Part shown: one piece after another, positions 16,643 through 58,113 of the stretch
Layout: the number at the start of each line of letters is the position of its first letter
Numbering within the stretch: the first letter of the stretch is position 1
Translations under genes and position numbers: made by a program
The notes under the pieces: model-generated
What the model saw: only the letters and a program-made list of their open reading frames with translations
The model's database searches: none
What the model was told of the DNA's origin: nothing
From: Anolis carolinensis
Taxonomy: Eukaryota
Length of the DNA: 64,000 bases
Assembly (NCBI RefSeq): GCF_035594765.1
Contig: NC_085845.1
Span: forward strand, 38,248,024 to 38,312,023
Direction of reading: 5' to 3'

Positions 16643-16932
16643 CAGAGCTGGCCCTAGGTATTTTTCAAGTGTAGGCGAACAGAATTTTGCCACCCCCCCC
16701 CCAAAAAAAAATCACTGAAAAATAAAAGCGTTGGATAAGCGAAAATGTTGGATAATAAGGAGGGATTAAGGAAAAGCCTATTAAACATCAAATTACATTA
16801 AGATTTTACAAATTAAGCACCAAAACGTCATGTTTTACAACAAATCAACAGAAAAAGCAGTCTCGACTGCGCCCCCATATGTTTGGCACCCGAAGCGACT
16901 GCTTAATTCGCCTCATTGTTGGACCGGCTCTG
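16643..16932 (+). mobile_element. Non-autonomous hAT element (290 bp) containing a Tigger-like MITE fragment; short sibling of 48169-51260
   Basis: TIRs CAGAGCTGG...CCGGCTCTG and a degenerate 8-bp TSD CCAATATC/CCAAGAGC. The first ~220 bp are near-identical to 48169-48380. Confidence 0.85.
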
Positions 16933-17959: not shown

Positions 17960-18185
17960 TTAAATTGAGGCTGTGTCTTTTATTTTTGTAATGTGTTGTT
18001 AATTGATATTGTTATTGTTTAATATGCTGATGTAATTTTACCTGTATTTTATGTGTATTATGGCACTATTGTGTACTATTCTGTAAGACACCCCGAGTCC
18101 TTGTGGGAGATGGTGGCAGGATACAAATAAAGTTGTTGTTGTTGTTGTTGTTGTTATTATTATTATTACAATAACATTATTATTA
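17960..18185 (+). mobile_element. L2 3' tail plus (GTT)n(TTA)n microsatellite
   Basis: GTAAGACACCCCGAGTCCTTGTGGGAGATGGTGGCAGGATACAAATAAA followed by the simple repeat. Confidence 0.65.
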
Positions 18186-19710
18186 TGACACAGCAAACAA
18201 GATAGATATGCTGGATTTCATATCACAAAATCACAAGTCGAACACTTCCCAAGTGTCTAGGACTGTGTGATGTATTTTCAGATGATGCACACAGATCCCA
18301 GCAGGGTGGCCTTTTGGAGCTGGCAGATCATACTTTTGTCAGTGTCTATTGTTTCCAAATGCCGGCTGAGATCTTTTGGCACGGCACCCAATGTGCCCAT
18401 CACCACCGGGACCACCTGTATTGGTTTCTGCCAGAGTCTTTGAAGTTCAATCTTGAGGTCCTGATAGCGGCTGAGTTTTTCCTGTTGTTTTTCATCAATG
18501 CGACTGTCACCTGGGATGGCAACATCAATGATCCAAACCTTTTTCTTTTCCACAACTGTGATGTCTGGTGTGTTGTTCCAGGACTTTGTCAGTCTGGATT
18601 CGGAAGTCCCACAGTATCTTTGCGTGCTCATTTTCCAATACTTTTGCAGGTTTGTGACTCCTCCAGTTCTTTACTGCTGGGAGGTGGTACTTGAGGCATA
18701 AGTTCCAATGAATCATTTGGGTCACTTAGTTGTGTCTCTGTTTGTAGTCTGTCTGTGCGATTTTCTTACAGTAACTGAGAATATGATCAATGGTTTCGTC
18801 GGTTTCTTTGCACAGTCTGCATTTTAGGTCATCAGCTAATTTTTCGATCTTGGCTGTAATTGCATTTGTTCTGATGGCTTGCTCCTGGGCTGCAAGGATA
18901 AGACCTTCTGTCTCCTTCTTCAGGGTCCCTTTGTGAGCCATGGCCAGGTCTTCTCCTTATCAGCTTTTCCTTCAATTTTGTCAAGGAACTTTCCATGCAA
19001 TGTTTTGTTGTGCCAGCTGTCAGCTCTAGTGTGTAGTGCGGTTTTCTTGTACTGGTTTTTTGTCTGCTGTGCTTTGAGGAGTTTCTGATTTTTGACTTCA
19101 ATCAAAGAAGGTTCTTCACTTTGCTTTACATATTCTGCCAGGGCATGTTCTTCTTCTTTGACTGCTTGTTTTACTTGTGAGAGTCCTCTGCCACCAGATC
19201 TTCTAGGCAGATATAGCTGGTCAACATCACTGTGAGGGTGCAGTGAATGATGGTCATGAGTTTTCTTGTTTTTCTTTCCAAATTGTCCAGTTCTACCTGT
19301 GTCCAATTTATAATGCCAGCAGTATATCTTATGACAGGTATGGCCCAGGTGTTTATGACCTTGATGGTGTTGCCTCCATTGAGCTTGCTTTTGAGAATTT
19401 TTCTGATCCTTTGTGTGTATTCTTTGCTGACCACAGTTTTCACATGTTCATGCTTGATGTTGTCCAGCTGTAATATGCCCAGATATTTATAGGCCTCGGG
19501 CTGGTGACACTTTATTGTTTGGCCATTAGGCGTATTTATGCCCTCACTTTCAATGATTTTTCCCTTCTTCAATGCCACTGTTGAACATTTGTCCAAACCA
19601 AACTCTATGCTGATATCAGTGCTAAAAATTCGGACAGTGTTAGTCAGAGACTGGATTTCAGTTTCCATTTTCCCATATAGCTTCAGGTCATCCATGTACA
19701 TCAGATGCGA
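18186..19710 (-). mobile_element. R4/Dong-clade non-LTR retrotransposon, 5'-truncated and frameshifted
   Basis: RT motif YMDDLKLY (19171-19701), CCHC finger CRLCKETDETIDHILSYC (18726-18941) and restriction-like endonuclease PDI...IIDVAIP (18278-18631). Flanked on both sides by (TTA)n. Confidence 0.92.
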
Positions 19711-21600: not shown

Positions 21601-21779
21601 CACATGTTTTGTTTCCTCCACAATTTTGGGTGAACAAAGTAGATTTCAACACGTTAAATATAACAATGTATTTATCATGTCTGTATCACATACAGTTTGC
21701 TAGAAAAAGGCAAAACATTCTAAGCGTTGCTTTATATCTGTAGCAGCATACACCATGATAGTAATGGTGTCATCAAGAA

Positions 21780-22283
21780 ACAAAACTAAAAATGTTTTGT
21801 GACTCATCGATAAACCGAAATCTCTGATCAGATTGCTCTGCTCTGTCTGAGATATTAAATGAAGATCACTGGATATTGATGGCACAGAGTCAGGATCAGC
21901 ATCAGCTTCCATCTGCATCTGATCGCCATCATTGCTTACCTTCTCATCCTGTAGTGTCCATGCTTCTGGCATGCCCGAGTAAGTTTCTACATGAACAGAA
22001 ATTTACTCTGGTGGTATTTTAACAGATGGAGTCTGTGTTACATGTTACATAATGTTGGTTATGGCTGTCAAATATATGAGCAATCTTAAAGATCATGAAA
22101 GTTACTGTCGAGCAAGAAAATGTTTCAAAATTTTGCAATAATTGTGAAACATAAAACATAATTGGCTGTTTCCCAAAAACCTTATGTGATGTGAGAATTT
22201 TGAAGTTATTTATGTGATCACTGTCAAAAATCTATTTGGTACACAAAAAATTCTAAAGGAAACAAAATACCTGTTTTCCAGTA
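21780..22283 (-). mobile_element. Chapaev-like (CMC superfamily) DNA transposon remnant with a transposase fragment
   Basis: ORF 21700-21972 encodes DPDSVPSISSDLHLISQTEQSNLIRDFGLS, which resembles the Chapaev motif PHLIxQxELNDLVRDLxLS. The minus strand begins with an ACTGGAAAACA terminus at 22283. Confidence 0.6.
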
Positions 22284-46431: not shown

Positions 46432-46820
46432 GTTATATTCATATATTTATTTATACCCTGCTTTATCTCCCCAAAGGGGACTCAAAGTAGCTTCACATAA
46501 AAACTTTAGTATACAATTTTAAATAAATACATATGTGTTTAGAATTCAACACAAACAGTACTAAAATACCACTGTTTAAATCTATCAAAACAGTTAAAAA
46601 ACACCCCCTGACATGATCTTAAAAACCTTCTTCTTTAAAAGCCTGCCTGAATAAAAAAGCTTTAGCCTGCCACCTGAAGGACAGCAGGGAGGGGGGCATT
46701 CTGGCTTCCCTGAGCAGGAAGTTCCAGAATTGAAGAGCAGCCATCAAAAATGTCTCCTCTCTTGTTCCCACCAACTGGGCTTGAGATGGAGGTGGGACCG
46801 AGAGAAGGGCCTCTCCCCTT
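46432..46820 (-). mobile_element. L2 3' fragment
   Basis: L2 tail ATACCCTGCTTTATCTCCCCAAAGGGGACTCAAAG plus an ORF2 C-terminal remnant. Confidence 0.8.
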
Positions 46821-47519: not shown

Positions 47520-47934
47520 TTTTATTTAATGATCTCAACTGGCTCAGGTCCAGACTATTTGACCAACTACATCTTGTACGAACCTAGCCAGGCCCTGAGA
47601 TTTTCAGGAAAGGCCTTTCTCTTGGTCCCACCTTCCTTTCAAGTTCAATTGATGGGAATGAGAGAGAGGACCTTCTCAGTGGCTGCCCCTCAACTCTGGA
47701 ACTCCTTGCCCAGGGAAGCCATAATTGCTCCCTCTCTGCAGGTTAAACCCTTTTTATTCAGGCAAGAAGGTTTTTAAGATCGTCAGGGTCTGCTGTGATT
47801 TTATATGCTTCTAATGATGTTTAACACTGTTTTAATACTTTTATATTTGTATATTTTAAGTTGGATTGCAATACTTTTAGTTGTGAGCTGCTTTGAGTCT
47901 CTGTATGGAGAAAAAAGTGAGGTATAAAGAAACA

Positions 47935-47980: not shown

Positions 47981-48430
47981 GACAAAGTTCTGGAACACAA
48001 CACACCAGACATCACAGTTGTGGAAAAGAAAAAGGTTTGGATCATTGATGTTGCCATCCCAGGTGACAGTCGCATTGACAAAAAACAACAGGAAAAACTC
48101 AGCCGCTATCAGGACCTCAAGATTGAACTTCAAAGACTCTGGCAGAAACCAGTGCAGGTGGTCCCGGTCAGAGCCGGCCCAAGGTATTTTTCAAGTGTAG
48201 GCGAACAGAATTTTGGTGCCCCCTCCCCAAACCAATCACTGAAAAATAAAAGCGTTGGATAAGTAAAAATGTTGGATAATAAGGATTAAGGAAAAGCCTA
48301 TTAAACATCAAATTACAATATGATTTTACAAATTAAGCACCAAATCATGTTTTATAACAAATCAACAGAAAAAGCAGTTCAATACATGGTAATGTTATGT
48401 AGAAATTATTATATTTGCGAATTTAGCACC

Positions 48431-48811
48431 ATAGAATCATAGAATAGTAAGTTGGAAGAGACCTCATGGGCCATCCAGTCCAAGCCGCTGCCAAGAAGCA
48501 GGAAATCACATTCAAAGCACCCCCGACAGATGGCCATCCAGCCTCTGCTTAAAAGCCTCCAAATAAGGAGCCTCCACCACATTCCAGGGCAGAGAGTTCC
48601 ACTGCCGAACATCTCTCACAGTGAGGAAGTTCTTCCTGATGTTCAGGTGGAATCTCCTTTCCTGTAGTTTGAAGCCATTGTTCCGCGTCCTAGTCTGCAG
48701 GGCAGCAGAAAACAGGCTTGTTCCCTCCTCCCTATGATTTCCCCTCACATATTTGTACATGGCCATCATGTCTCCTCTCAGCCTTCTCTTCTGCAGGCTA
48801 AACATGCCCAG
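48431..48811 (-). mobile_element. CR1 3' fragment inside the composite element
   Basis: ORF MFSLQKRRLRGDM...WNSLP and an ATTCTATG tail. Same family as 55732-56750. Confidence 0.92.
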
Positions 48812-48964
48812 TTCTGTAAGCCTTGGATGCTTTCCAGCTTGTCAACCCAGTTCAAAGCAGATATTGTGGGTTATTCTGCTTTGACATTCTGGGTTATATG
48901 GCTGTGTGGAAGAGCCTTAAAGTCCTTATGAATCCATAGGAATTAAAAGGCCACTGAAAGGGAA

Positions 48965-49583
48965 TATGGCCCCTGGTATTAAAAAAAACTCTAAAATCAG
49001 GACAGTAAATAAAGAACACTCTCAAAACAAGGGAATTCCAGACAGGAAACAATCAGGGCCAGTTAACACCACCCAAGAAAGGATTCCCCCAGGCAGGAAT
49101 CAGTCAGGCTTCGTAAGGTCTGGTTGCTTATTGCTCGGGCATCCTCTACAGAAACGAGCAAACCATGAAAATGAACAAAATCTGGCTACCAGTATTTCAA
49201 AAAGCTCTATAATCAGGACAGTAAATTGAGAGAAACACTAAAAAAGGGAATTCCAGACAGGAAATAATCAGGGCCAGCCAACAAGATTCTGCCAGGCAGG
49301 AAGCAGCCAGGCTTTGAAGCTGCAAGGCTATTTGATGCTAATCAAGTTGGCCAATTGCAACATTCACACTTGTCTCAGACAAGAGTTCTTTCTCCCACCC
49401 TGGACTTTCCACAGACATAAAAACCTCACTGTCCTAGTATCCAATATGCCTCACAACCTCTGAGGATGCCTGCCATAGATGCAGGCGAAACATCAGGAGA
49501 GAATGCTTGTGGAACATGGCCATACCACCCAGAAAAATCACAGCAACCTAGTGATTCCAGCCATGAAAGCCTTGACAACACAT
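48965..49583 (+). mobile_element. Penelope 3'/pLTR sequence, partially tandem, inside the composite element
   Basis: AATCAGGACAGTAAAT...GGAATTCCAGACAGGAAA occurs twice. The pLTR end is CCATGAAAGCCTTGACAAC. Confidence 0.8.
49457..49497 (+). ncRNA. Minimal type I hammerhead ribozyme motif in a Penelope pLTR
   Basis: CCU-CUGAGGA-U-GCCUGC(CAUAGAU)GCAGGC-GAAA-CAUC-AGG. The CUGANGA and GAAA boxes, a 6-bp stem II and a 3-bp stem I are present. Confidence 0.7.
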
Positions 49584-49597
49584 AGAACCAAAACTGT

Positions 49598-49900
49598 TAG
49601 GCCCCATCTACATTGTGAAATAAAATCCAGATAATCTGCTTTGAAAGAAGATTTTATGGCAGTGTAGTCTCAGGTCCCTTTTACACTGTCACATAATCCT
49701 GATTATCAAAGCAGGCACCAATCCACATTATTTTCTTTAAACTGGATTATATGAGTCTACACTGTCATAAAATCAAGTTCAAGGCAGATAATTTGGATTT
49801 TATAGGGTATTGTTGAAGGGGCATCATATAATGCAGTTCAAAGCAGATAATCTGGATTATCAGATCTGTTAATCTGTATTATATGGCAGTGTAGAAGTGG
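49598..49900. mobile_element. Clustered or rearranged Harbinger-like MITE sequences
   Basis: Repeated TACACTG.CA.ATAATCC / GGATT.TATGGCAGTGTAG mirror motifs. Confidence 0.65.
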
Positions 49901-50059
49901 AGTTGGTGGAGTTCAGTACGCTCTTTGATTGTAGGTGAACTATAAATCTCAGCAACTACAACTCCCAAATGACAAATCAATCTCCACCCAACCCAGAAAG
50001 AAGGGGGTTGGACTGCATGGCCTTTAGAGGTCCCTTCCCACTCTATATGATCCTATGAA

Positions 50060-50787
50060 CATTGTTTACAAACTGCATCCAATGACAGATTCCCTTACTT
50101 CTTTCTCCTGAGCCCCATTTCGGTGGTAAGGCAATAGAGATAGCATTGCAGCTCAAAGAGAGCCCAGCTTCCTATCCATGCAGCCAGGAGGGAAAGCAAC
50201 AAAACGCAGCCTGTCCCTTTAAGAGGGACCGCGTTTCTCTCCAGTCCGAAGCGCAATGCCTCCTGGGAAGCCGAGTGCCGGTGTCTCCTCCCACTTGCTT
50301 CCTCTGCTTTACTTGAGAAGGCCAAGAACTGCATTTCCCAGCATGCAAAGTAAGGTAAACTGGGCGCTGCGGCCTTAAAGGGCCAGCACAGGCAGAAGCG
50401 GCTCCAAAGCTCAGCAAGGAGGTAATGCTTTGCCAAAATGTGGTTCCTGTTTTGGAATGGTGGTGTCTTTGGTGGGGAGGAGACAGCCCTCAGGTGCAGG
50501 CCAGGATCACTTCCTTGGCGTGCGCCTTGGCGGCTTGGGCTCCTGCCTCCTTCACTCCAGGACGCAAAGGCTTGGCTCGGCTTGGCTTGGCTGGCTCTGG
50601 TTGCCGGTGCCCGATGCTGGTCTGTCTTGGCTTCGGAATCCCTCCCCCCAGCCCCCTACAGCCCCTTCTCGCCGCCCCTCTGCCGATGCCTCCTTCCCTT
50701 TCCCCTGCCCAACGGAGCCAGAGGCTTCTTTGTGCACAGGAGGGAGCCTCGCGGCAGCCTCTCCTCCCTTCCCTCCCTAGGACTCCC

Positions 50788-50836
<49 letters not shown>

Positions 50837-51190
50837 AGGAGAAAGGGAAGGGTGGGGGGATGCCTGGAGCCTCAGCCCTCCCTTTCCGCGGATCCTGCAT
50901 CAACTCACTTACAATCAGGCCACATGTTCCCTGAGCCCCCCCCCCCCCCAAGAAGCGGGAGGGAGCATCACGAGCCGAAAGCCTGGAGGGAGAGGCTCAG
51001 GGTCCCTAGGTCCCTGAGGCAAGGGAAGAGAGGCAGCCTGGAGGAGGAGGTGAAGAAGGGGCGCCTGGGATGCAGGGCCCAGAGCGGGAGGAAGAGAAGA
51101 GGAGAGCGAAGGGCATGAGGCCGGGGGAGAAGAGCTGAGCAAAACGGAGGCGTGCGAGCAACCCTGGGAGGAGGAGGCACGGGGGAGCGT
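50060..51190. promoter_or_regulatory. CpG-rich, promoter / first-exon-like segment captured in the hAT element
   Basis: The only strongly GC/CpG-rich tract in the window. It has a ZNF143-like motif AACTGCATTTCCCAGCATGC (50327-50346), a (GA)n tract (50790-50833) and G/C runs. Confidence 0.45.
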
Positions 51191-52189
51191 CTCAAGTGCG
51201 CCCCCACAGGATGGCGCTCCAGGCAAATGCCTAGTTTGCCTCGCCGTTGAACCGCCTCTGGTCCCGGTGGTGATGGGCACATTGGGTGCCGTGCCAAAAG
51301 ATCTCAGCCGGCATTTGGAAACAATAGACATTGACAAAATTACGATCTGCCAACTGCAAAAGGCCACCCTGCTGGGATCTGTGCGCATCATCCGAAAATA
51401 CATCACACAGTCCTAGACACTTGGGAAGTGTTCGACTTGTGATTTTGTGATATGAAATCCAGCATATCTATCTTGTTTGCTGTGTCATAATAAAATAATC
51501 TATTATAATAATAATAATAAATCTGAAGCTCTTTCACTTGACTAGAGATTTGTGTCACTTGAAAGTTTAATGGAACAGCCATTTCATGAAGATAGAGATC
51601 TTTAAAACTAAACATAAGAGAGATTCTTATTTTTGGTTAATAGTGCTACTTCCCAAATCCCTCTACTACAGAACACATATATATTTTAGAGAACAACAGT
51701 ATAAAAAGCAATGGATAAAGGGTCAGAGTCTCTTCTAGAACTATTTTAACCAAACTGTAACACCTGCCAAATCCTCTCTTCAATTATCAGCCTTGAGCAA
51801 TCAGCCAGCTACTTGATAATTAATGGAAATAGAGGGGAAAGCACTTCAAGGGCTTTAAAATATTCTGGCTGATGGTTTCATGTATAAAATCAAATTAGCT
51901 ATTCTACTGTTAATCATGTTGTCTACACACCTCCATAATAAACTCTATAGCTCAGTACTCGTATATTTCAGGAACAAAGCAGTTACGTAGCTCTGATTAT
52001 TTTTTCACTTAGAATTTATATGTAAATGCACCAATTTGGATTGCAAAATTGAAATTAGATGCAGGATTTGGAAAGGCAAAAACCTTCCATAAACACAATT
52101 TTTGCAGTGTGTGCAAAAGTGTCCTATGCACTTTTCGTGAGGAACTAGTCCCATGGGTTCATATCAGAATCTCTGAGGGTGCTTTCTGA

Positions 52190-55731: not shown

Positions 55732-56750
55732 AAATGCATCTTCTTCATCTTGGAAAGAAGTCACGAGTGGAGTGCCGCAGGGTTCCGTCCTGGGCCCGGT
55801 TCTGTTTAACATCTTTATTAACGACTTAGACGAAGGGTTAGAAGGCACGATCATCAAGTTTGCAGACGACACCAAATTGGGAGGGATAGCCAACACTCCA
55901 GATGACAGGAGCAGAATTCAAAATGATTTTGATAGATTAGAGAGATGGGCCGAAACAAACAAAATGTTCAACAGGGACAAATGCAAGATACTCCACTTCG
56001 GCAGAAAAAAACAGAATGCAAAGATACAGAATGGGGGATGCCTGGCTCGACAACAGTACATGTGAAAAAGATCTTGGAGTCCTTGTGGACAGCAAGTTAA
56101 ACATGAGCCAACAATGTGATGCGGCTGCTAAAAAAGCCAATGGGATTCTGGCCTGCATCAATAGGAGTATAGTGTCTAGATCCTGGGAAGATCCTGCTCC
56201 CCCTCTATTCTGCCTTGGTCAGACCACACCTGGAATTCTGTGTCCAATTCTGGGCACCACAATTGAAGGGAGATGTTGACAAGATGTAAGGTGACCAGAG
56301 GAGGGCGACTAAAATGATCAAGGGTCTGGAGAACAAGCCCTATGAGGAGCGACTTAAAGAACTAGGCATGTTTAGCCTGCAGAAGAGAAGGCTGAGAGGA
56401 GACATGATAGCTATGTATAAATATATGAGGGGAAGTCATAGGGAGGAGGGAGCAAGATTGTTTTCTGCTGCCCTGCAGACTAGGAAGTGGAACAATGGCT
56501 TCAAACTACAGGAAAGGAGATTCCAGCTGAACATTAGGAAGAACTTCCTCACAGTGAGGGCTGTTCGGCAGTGGAACTCTCTTCCCTGGACTGTGGTGGA
56601 GGCTCCTTCTTTGGAGACTTTTAATCAGAGGCTGGATGGCCATCTGTCGGGGATGCTTTGAATGCGATTTCCTGCTTCTTGGCAGGGGTTAGACTGGATG
56701 GCCCATGAGGTCTCTTCCAGCTCTACTATTCTATGATTCTATGATTCTGT
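55732..56750 (+). mobile_element. CR1 LINE, 5'-truncated (RT and C-terminus, frameshifted)
   Basis: [35 protein letters not shown] and an (ATTCTATG)n tail. Confidence 0.95.
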
Positions 56751-57794
56751 GGACACCCAGAATCAGACTGTAACCTCGTATTTCTTCACATAGAAAAAAT
56801 TTACTCGGTACTCCATAACATTTATTATATAACAAATAAAATAAATATCTGTTCCATCCACAGTACACAGAAACCCTTCTGTTTCAAACCACATTATGTT
56901 ATTTTCTTGAACTCTCAATCTGCTCAGCTCCCAAAACCCAGTTTCTGACAGATAAGGTTCCAAGTTATACGCTTTTCTCCATCCATCCCTCCTTCACAAC
57001 ATTCTCTTTCACAACTCATAAGACCTATTGGAACTCAATCTCTGGGCTCCTCCAGACCTGTCTCAAAATGCAGGACCTATCTCACTGTTACTAGAGGCAT
57101 CCAAAAGATGTCTCTGATAAAACTCAATTAATACTGAGAAAATCAAGTTTCTTTGGTTTACTCTACATTAATTAAATACCTCATTGGATTCTGGTCTTTA
57201 TTAAGGATCTGGCTCTAATGAGGTATTGGGCTTTTGGGGACTTATTCCTGGGATTGCTTCCACAGTCCTAGGAGTCAGTCCCCATAGCCATCCCGCTTCT
57301 TCGGGCTCCAAATAGTCTTCAGGATCCCCTTCCCCCAAGCCTCTTAAAATTTACCGAAAAGGATCCCTGGCAGCTCTGAAGCCTCCCCTCATGTCATACT
57401 GAGTGGAGGAAATGACACATGAGGAGACCGGGGGGGGGGGGATTTTCTTCCTCACCCCTTCCATTTCCTCAGGCATCATTTCCTCCATTCAGGACAATGA
57501 GAAGAGAGGCTTCATGGCTGCCAGGGAGCCCTTTCAGTAAGTTTTAGGGGCTAAATTCAGGGCTTGGGGTGAATTTCACCCCAAGCCACTATCCCAATTT
57601 CATGTAGCCACTCCTTAGGGAAAGCCTAGGATTTGGCTTGGGGGGTGGGGACTATAACCAAAGCTGGTTACTTTAATCTATTTCAATATTAGTTATGTCT
57701 GGAAGGGCACTTCATTGCAGTATCTGGTTCCCAGATGAAATTATCCAAAACATTTTTATTTTTAAAATATGTTTTAAAATAAAAGAAACAGATT

Positions 57795-58113
57795 CAGTAG
57801 AGTCTCACTTATCCAACACTCACTTATCCAATGTTCTGGATTATCCAACACATTTTTGTAGTCAAAGTTTTCAATATATCGTGATATTTTGGTGCTAAAT
57901 TCGTAAATACAGTAATTACTACATAGCAGTAATGTGTAATGAACTACTTTTTCTGTCAAATTTGTTGTATAACACAATGTTTTGGTGCTTAATTTGTAAA
58001 ATCATAACCTATTTTGATGTTTAATAGGCTTTTTCTTAATCTCTTCTTATTATCCAACATATTTGCTTATCCAACGTTCTGCCGGCCCGTTTATGTTGGA
58101 TGAGACTCTACTG
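57795..58113. mobile_element. Tc1/mariner (Tigger-like) MITE, full length
   Basis: TIRs CAGTAGAGTCTCA / TGAGACTCTACTG|TA with internal TTATCCAAC repeats. Confidence 0.85.

What the first reader, a model, noticed from the sequence alone, without database searches (positions are those of the whole stretch)
48169..51260. Pack-hAT-like element: a 3.1-kb non-autonomous DNA transposon carrying a mosaic cargo with a CpG-island-like segment
Seen in sequence: the R4 LINE reading frame stops at GTCCCGGT (48168) and resumes with the same 8-mer at 51261. The DNA between them has CAGAG(C/G)CGG inverted termini. Its cargo, in order, is a Tigger-like MITE piece, CR1 3' end, Harbinger piece, Penelope pLTRs with a hammerhead, Harbinger cluster, CR1 tail and a 1.1-kb GC-rich non-TE-looking tract. 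Established: 8-bp TSDs with CAG termini indicate hAT, and gene-capturing Pack-TIRs are known mainly from plants. Inference: the host R4 copy is young while several internal repeats are degraded and lack their own TSDs, so the cargo was probably mobilised as one unit from another locus. Such an element could disperse regulatory DNA. TE-capturing non-autonomous elements may already be catalogued for this lineage, so novelty rests on the host-derived cargo.
Basis: partly seen in the sequence, partly recalled or inferred. Interest (0 to 1): 0.85.

Follow-up and report, generated by a model that had tools for sequence, protein, structure and literature searches.

The report
Anole hAT transposon carrying promoter-like cargo
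A 3.1-kb cut-and-paste jumping element in the green anole genome carries a load of old repeat fragments plus a low-copy stretch that looks like a two-way gene promoter; it is real, but DNA-capturing elements of this kind are already described in this lizard and in other vertebrates.

Summary
The insertion is real. It is 3,092 bp (48169-51260) with an exact 8-bp target duplication, and removing it restores the R4 LINE frame. Its ends carry the CAGAGSCGGYCC repeat of the orphan anole families hAT-N6/N7/N8_AC (PMC3014272); a 290-bp sibling sharing the first 210 bp sits at 16643-16932. The Tigger-like piece therefore belongs to the hAT arm, not the cargo. The cargo (about 48432-51188) is truncated repeats, older than the R4 host and without their own duplications, plus a 1.1-kb GC-rich tract. 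In public contigs the tract is low-copy (about 2-4 versions, 90-100% alike), shows no protein match, and is not a formal CpG island (o/e 0.39). It holds two back-to-back ZNF143-type sites, each followed by the same 9-mer, which suggests a bidirectional promoter. One contig joins tract and right end to a different flank, hinting at a second insertion. The donor locus was not identified. DNA uptake by anole hATs (Novick 2011) and animal Pack-hATs with 5'-UTR cargo (Tan 2021) are published, and this scan has noted several similar Pack-like hATs elsewhere in this genome. Verdict: new member of a known kind.

The parts
47984..48168 (+). Host R4 LINE, 5'-truncated 3' end, part before the insertion
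48161..48168 (+). Target-site duplication, left copy (GTCCCGGT)
48169..48180 (+). Left terminal inverted repeat CAGAGCCGGCCC
   Evidence: matches the hAT-N6/N7/N8_AC repeat in PMC3014272
48169..48431 (+). Left hAT arm; first 210 bp are 90% identical to the 290-bp sibling at 16643-16932; includes the TcMar (Tigger-like) MITE fragment at about 48253-48431
48432..48822 (-). CR1 3' end, joined to the arm inside its microsatellite tail with a 2-bp (CA) microhomology
   Evidence: 93% to the CR1 at 56353-56743; junction
48823..48917 (.). Right end of a Harbinger-like MITE, cut off by the CR1
   Evidence: 74-78% to 49683-49897; ends in GCC followed by TTA
48940..49585 (+). Penelope (Poseidon-type) fragments in partial tandem, with small deletions
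   Evidence: Direct repeats D2, D3, D10; 84-85% to in-window relatives
49457..49500 (+). Hammerhead-like motif of the Penelope piece, probably degenerate
   Evidence: Core CUGAGGA, stem II and GAAA; anole Penelope hammerhead described in PMC11167929; no Rfam hit
49600..49897 (.). Palindromic Harbinger-like MITE, last few bases of the right end missing
   Evidence: Inverted repeats I3, I4, I10-I12; fold z -5.0; other genomic copies continue with GGGGCC then TAA (loose ends)
49898..49995 (.).
   Evidence: High summed contig depth in these bins
49997..50060 (+). CR1 3' tail fragment
   Evidence: 85% to the CR1 at 56600-56800
50061..51188 (.). Low-copy GC-rich tract (60% G+C, CpG o/e 0.39), no protein match; contains a (GA)n run at about 50791-50836 and a poly-C run at 50937-50950
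50252..50276 (-). ZNF143/Staf-type site pointing left (16 of 25 to the published SBS2 probe, core intact); CTTAAAGGG follows at 50223-50215
50328..50352 (+). ZNF143/Staf-type site pointing right (17 of 25, with a one-base variant of the RRACTAYRN extension); CTTAAAGGG follows at 50374-50382
51189..51260 (+). Right hAT arm (72 bp), about 70% like the right end of the 290-bp sibling
   Evidence: contig depth rises here
51249..51260 (-). Right terminal inverted repeat CAGAGGCGGTTC
51261..51268 (+). Target-site duplication, right copy
51261..51500 (+). Host R4 LINE, part after the insertion: end of frame, 3' UTR and start of the TAA tail

Best explanation
A non-autonomous Pack-type hAT of the orphan hAT-N6/N7/N8_AC end type. 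An ancestor with these ends, already holding the TcMar piece in its left arm, took up genomic DNA between its arms, most likely by template switching during repair of a break inside the element (inferred). The captured DNA was a gene-proximal stretch: old repeat debris followed by a GC-rich region whose two back-to-back ZNF143-type sites point to a bidirectional promoter (motifs shown; activity inferred). The whole 3.1-kb unit was later cut and pasted into this R4 copy by a transposase supplied in trans (8-bp duplication shown; the enzyme is unidentified, as for hAT-N6/7/8). It is most likely a passive, probably silenced promoter duplicate at very low copy number.
For: Exact 8-bp duplication and restored R4 frame. 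End sequence equals the published hAT-N6/7/8 repeat, and a short sibling shares the left arm. Internal repeats are 84-93% like their relatives against 97% for the R4 host, carry no duplications of their own, and the TcMar piece does not resume after the CR1. The tract is low-copy: listed contigs show versions about 100%, 98%, 94-97% and 90-92% alike in three independent runs. A 91-92% paralogue is no longer laid by 51131 in all three, as a donor lacking the hAT arm would behave. The two best ZNF143-type sites of the 64-kb window lie in the tract; no shuffle of 2000 gave two; the only two CTTAAAGGG of the window follow them symmetrically. Multicopy animal Pack-TIRs tend to capture GC-rich DNA.
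Against: No donor locus or gene was identified. The second-site contig is single, of depth 5, and could be an assembly chimera through the shared right arm. The two near-identical versions are distributed across runs (X1 and X9 one, X7 the other, X19 both) in a way that also fits two alleles of one locus. CpG o/e is only 0.39-0.47. Candidate splice donors at 50422 (+) and 50098 (-) match only 6 of 9 consensus letters. The target site does not fit the family consensus NNTNNANN. Contigs cannot show transcription. The 9-mer symmetry was noticed after looking, so it has no formal prior test.
Confidence: 0.6

Rival explanations
1. Gap filling in place: a short hAT-N7/N8-like element inserted into the R4 first, later broke internally and copied in the 2.75-kb filler from another locus. 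The composite never moved and is single-copy.
For: This is the commonest origin of animal Pack-TIRs (277 of 281 single-copy). Microhomology at the left junction. The near-identical versions behave like alleles across runs. Paralogues at 94-97% are not much more diverged than two R4 copies (97%).
Against: Gap filling mostly copies DNA from within 15 kb, usually under 5 kb, but no second copy of the tract lies in the window, 48 kb to the left and 13 kb to the right. One contig joins cargo and right end to another flank. The left arm has drifted 10% from the sibling, with deletions, while the duplication is perfect.
Confidence: 0.2
2. The GC tract is not a captured working promoter but part of a small family of duplicated or repeat-derived cassettes (for example zinc-finger-gene promoter cassettes or an uncatalogued low-copy repeat), so all its versions are element-borne or segmental copies.
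For: Several versions at 90-97% exist rather than one donor. The 91-92% version aligns only over 50944 to about 51125 in its longest listed piece, so the tract may itself be a mosaic. ACTACA-n-TCCCA words also occur in anole repeats, including 49955 inside the cargo and 63407; unchecked scan notes say the same. CpG o/e is below island level.
Against: Summed depth is four to five orders of magnitude below the repeat bins. The two sites carry the full core, which the repeat-borne words score lower on, and sit in a symmetric divergent layout.
Confidence: 0.15
3. The internal repeats inserted one after another into a hAT already sitting at this site.
For: Anole CR1, Penelope and MITE families are abundant and partly still active.
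Against: Seven pieces in 1.6 kb, all truncated, none with its own duplication, all more diverged than the host R4; it does not explain the low-copy tract.
Confidence: 0.05

Closest known systems
hAT-N6_AC, hAT-N7_AC, hAT-N8_AC (Novick et al., PMC3014272)
   Same: Same 12-bp terminal repeat (one deviation at the right end), 8-bp duplication, non-coding, no known autonomous partner; left arm 90% identical to a 290-bp copy of hAT-N7 size in the window.
   Different: 3,092 bp against 288-810 bp; very low copy number against about 1,000 or more; carries 2.75 kb of foreign DNA; target site off the family consensus.
hobo_AC and hobo-N1 to N15_AC (PMC3014272)
   Same: Anole hATs of 1.3-3.4 kb (up to 15 kb if autonomous) that took up genomic DNA holding older CR1, Penelope, SINE and Chapaev fragments and moved it as a unit.
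   Different: Different ends (TAGGCTT...), tens to hundreds of copies; the paper mentions no promoter, exon or host-gene cargo.
Animal Pack-TIRs, e.g. Pack-hAT-N8_XT carrying the CAPSL 5' UTR (Tan et al., PMC8277862)
   Same: hAT ends around non-repeat, gene-proximal, GC-rich DNA; microhomology at a junction.
   Different: Cargo here is far longer than the 291-bp frog case and mixes repeat debris with promoter-like DNA; parental locus not identified; the survey found none in lizard, where only 77 TIR elements were annotated.
ZNF143/Staf bidirectional promoters (PMC3082894, PMC3627581)
   Same: Two SBS-type sites with intact core, one with the RRACTAYRN extension, in divergent layout in GC-rich DNA.
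   Different: Inside a transposon, CpG-poor for an active island, no transcription shown.

Membership tests
hAT superfamily | 8-bp target-site duplication | tested here: met
hAT superfamily | Short terminal inverted repeats starting YARNG | tested here: met
   CAGAG at both ends; motif
hAT superfamily (non-autonomous) | No transposase frame | tested here: met
   No long frame other than GC-rich ORFs without homologues and a CR1 piece
hAT-N6/N7/N8_AC | Terminal repeat CAGAGSCGGYCC | tested here: met
   Left end exact, right end one mismatch
hAT-N6/N7/N8_AC | Length 288-810 bp | tested here: not met
   3,092 bp; a relative with shared ends, not a member of the published consensi
hAT-N6/N7/N8_AC | Target consensus NNTNNANN or NTTRYAAN | tested here: not met
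   GTCCCGGT
hAT-N6/N7/N8_AC | Internal identity to the Repbase consensus sequences | not testable with these tools
   Consensus sequences not held; only the in-window sibling was compared
Pack-TIR | Ends of one TIR family on both sides of the cargo | tested here: met
Pack-TIR | Internal non-repeat sequence | tested here: met
   50070-51190 is low-copy in four runs; not compared with Repbase or Dfam
Pack-TIR | Identifiable parental copy without the transposon ends | tested here: inconclusive
Multicopy Pack-TIR | Two or more copies with different target duplications | tested here: inconclusive
   One low-depth contig with another flank
CpG island | G+C above 50-55% over 200-500 bp | tested here: met
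   60% over 1.1 kb
CpG island | CpG observed/expected above 0.6 | tested here: not met
   0.39 overall, 0.47 best 500 bp, 0.60 best 200 bp
ZNF143 bidirectional promoter | SBS core (CCCR at 3-6, C at 12), optionally with RRACTAYRN | tested here: met
   Two sites; 0 of 2000 shuffles with two
ZNF143 bidirectional promoter | Divergent transcription and ZNF143 binding | not testable with these tools
   Only contigs were available; no run on record as RNA

The most novel reading that the evidence does not exclude
A reptile hAT of the orphan hAT-N6/7/8 type has packaged a complete two-way ZNF143 promoter and moved it to at least two sites that differ between anole populations, where it can start new transcripts in both directions.
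Probability: 0.15. Interest if true: 0.62.

Novelty: new member of a known kind. Interest (0 to 1): 0.33.

Why it matters
It extends DNA capture in anoles from the hobo group to the orphan hAT-N6/7/8 group and supplies a lizard Pack-TIR candidate where the one animal-wide survey found none for lack of annotation. If the cargo is a working bidirectional promoter and the element is multi-copy, it would be a clean, testable case of a DNA transposon moving a whole vertebrate promoter. As it stands it is one more composite hAT in a genome known for them.

Tried and rejected
Protein searches of three frames of the tract found nothing. The representative search gave one repetitive 910-aa protein, rejected as a low-complexity match. 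Rfam gave only sub-threshold hits; the best is the MITE hairpin. Exact DNA patterns from the tract and the left arm were absent from the metagenome, viral and prokaryote collections, as expected for a lizard. Look-ups of earlier findings by sequence, by words and nearby were blank, which says nothing. The sigma-70 scan is irrelevant to a vertebrate. A Pfam scan of ten open stretches found no host gene in the window, only an RT piece. An snRNA-type promoter (SBS plus octamer) was considered because ATGCAAAG overlaps the right site, and dropped for lack of an Rfam hit. A one-base shift of the boundaries gives worse ends. Run X7 shows GATC put in at GATC sites, which looks like a Hi-C library, so its depths were used only roughly. 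Zero counts in the tables are unsafe because the tool did not count everything.
Full report
Source. The repeat content and the terminal sequences match those published for the green anole, Anolis carolinensis, and earlier scan notes on this genome name the same species. The window has no N. No host gene was found in it by a limited Pfam check.

Observation. The 8-mer GTCCCGGT stands at 48161-48168 and 51261-51268; no other length from 4 to 13 is duplicated at these boundaries. Removing 48169-51260 and one 8-mer gives an open frame ending at its natural stop, 97% identical to a second R4 copy at 18180-18587. The ends read CAGAGCCGGCCC and CAGAGGCGGTTC. This pattern has five matches in the window against 0.23 expected; two belong to a 290-bp element at 16643-16932 with a decayed duplication (6 of 8). 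Novick et al. list three anole families with this end, hAT-N6 (810 bp), N7 (288 bp) and N8 (329 bp), none with a known autonomous partner (PMC3014272). The 290-bp element fits hAT-N7 by size and ends. It shares the first 210 bp with the finding (90%) and a right end about 70% alike.

Anatomy. The left arm (48169-48431) includes the TcMar MITE fragment, which the short sibling also carries, so it is not cargo. The arm joins a CR1 3' end inside the CR1 tail, with a CA microhomology, and the TcMar sequence does not resume after the CR1. Then follow a Harbinger-like right end, Penelope fragments in partial tandem with a hammerhead-like motif, a palindromic Harbinger-like MITE, an unidentified high-copy fragment at 49898-49995, a CR1 tail, the GC tract (50061-51188) and a 72-bp right arm. 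Identities to in-window relatives are 93% (CR1), 84-85% (Penelope), 85% (CR1 tail) and 86% (TcMar) against 97% for the R4 host. No internal piece has a flanking duplication beyond 5-6-letter chance matches. The cargo was therefore not built by insertions after arrival; this is an inference from pairwise identities with single relatives, not from family consensi.

Copy number. Twenty runs from eight studies of one organism hold part of the tract, at best 67% of its words. Laying four runs shows summed contig depth of thousands to millions over 48000-50069 and 51220-51420, but tens to a few hundred over most of 50070-51104. The tool warns that depth is no copy number, so I rely on the listed pieces. 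These show a version identical to the window, one about 98% alike, one 92-97% alike that also has the CR1 tail next to the tract, one 90% alike, and one 91-92% alike over 50944-51107. They recur in X1, X7 and X19. I read this as about two to four loci. Contigs with the variant at 51116 are more numerous than those covering 51131 in all three runs, so one paralogue is no longer laid after about 51125; a donor without the hAT arm would look so. That is the signature of a second insertion. It is one contig of depth 5 and could be a chimera through the shared right arm. The 100% and 98% versions are also spread over runs like two alleles (X1, X9 one; X7 the other; X19 both). Multi-copy status is suggested, not shown. 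No copy of the tract lies elsewhere in the window.

The GC tract. It is 60% G+C with CpG o/e 0.39 (window 0.18); the best 200 bp reach 0.60 at 50205-50404. No frame tested has a protein relative. Against the SBS2 probe printed in PMC3627581, with the core defined in PMC3082894, the two best sites of the window are at 50328 (+, 17 of 25) and 50276 (-, 16 of 25). They are 52 bp apart and point away from each other; 11 of 2000 shuffles of the tract gave one such site and none gave two. Each is followed 46-53 bp on by CTTAAAGGG, the only two occurrences on either strand of the window. A looser 19-letter consensus alone was not significant (18 of 300 shuffles with two). ZNF143 sites are enriched in bidirectional promoters and suffice for two-way activity in human cells. 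I therefore read 50090-50430 as a captured bidirectional core promoter. First exons and splice donors are weak guesses (6 of 9 consensus letters). Shorter ACTACA-type words also occur in anole repeats (49955, 63407), which tempers the reading. Expression could not be tested: only contigs were available.

Mechanism. Shown: hAT-type insertion, family of the ends, age order, low copy number of the tract, promoter-type motifs. Inferred: capture by template switching inside an older hAT, then cut-and-paste of the unit by a transposase in trans (0.6). Rivals: gap filling in place with no later movement (0.2), the usual route for animal Pack-TIRs but one that mostly copies nearby DNA; a duplicated or repeat-derived cassette rather than a host promoter (0.15); serial insertions (0.05).

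Comparison. Anole hobo elements are known to take up large pieces of genomic DNA holding older CR1, Penelope and other fragments and to move them; that paper does not mention promoter or exon cargo. Tan et al. found 370 Pack-TIRs in animals, 208 with hAT ends, among them a frog hAT that spread a host 5' UTR to three chromosomes, and noted a GC bias in multicopy cases. Their lizard count was zero with only 77 annotated TIR elements. This scan has several unchecked notes of 1.6-2.0-kb Pack-like hATs with promoter-like cargo elsewhere in this genome; I could not compare their sequences and do not count them as support. The element works like a Pack-TIR and passes the hAT tests. It is a relative, not a member, of hAT-N6/7/8. 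The parental-copy test for Pack-TIR membership is inconclusive.

Verdict. A real, well-bounded composite hAT with probable promoter cargo; new member of a known kind; interest 0.33.

Noticed in passing
window 16643-16932: 290-bp hAT-N7_AC-like element with a 6-of-8 decayed target duplication; shares the left arm and the TcMar piece with the finding, so that abundant short family may be a deletion product of a longer composite ancestor.
   Followed up: yes
window 18180-19710 (-): A longer 5'-truncated R4 copy with RT remnants, 97% like the host R4 of the finding.
   Followed up: partly
window 57795-58112: Full-length TcMar-N7/N8-type MITE with the published CAGTAGAGTCTCACTTATCC end; used as the reference for the arm fragment.
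   Followed up: yes
window 46615-46816 and 47607-47781: Inverted pair of about 77% alike L2-type 3' pieces 790 bp apart, just left of the R4 (I1, I8, I16).
   Followed up: no
window 21703-22002 (-): Open stretch whose end recalls a Chapaev3-type transposase motif from memory; no Pfam hit.
   Followed up: partly
window 2983 (-) and 20166 (+): Ends of SPIN/hAT-N1-type MITEs (CAGTGGTTCTCAACCT).
   Followed up: no
window 50393-50404: A one-mismatch look-alike of the terminal repeat inside the GC tract, just after the right CTTAAAGGG; probably chance.
   Followed up: no
run X7, places 50048 and 50890: GATC put in at GATC sites, suggesting that this run is a Hi-C library.
   Followed up: no
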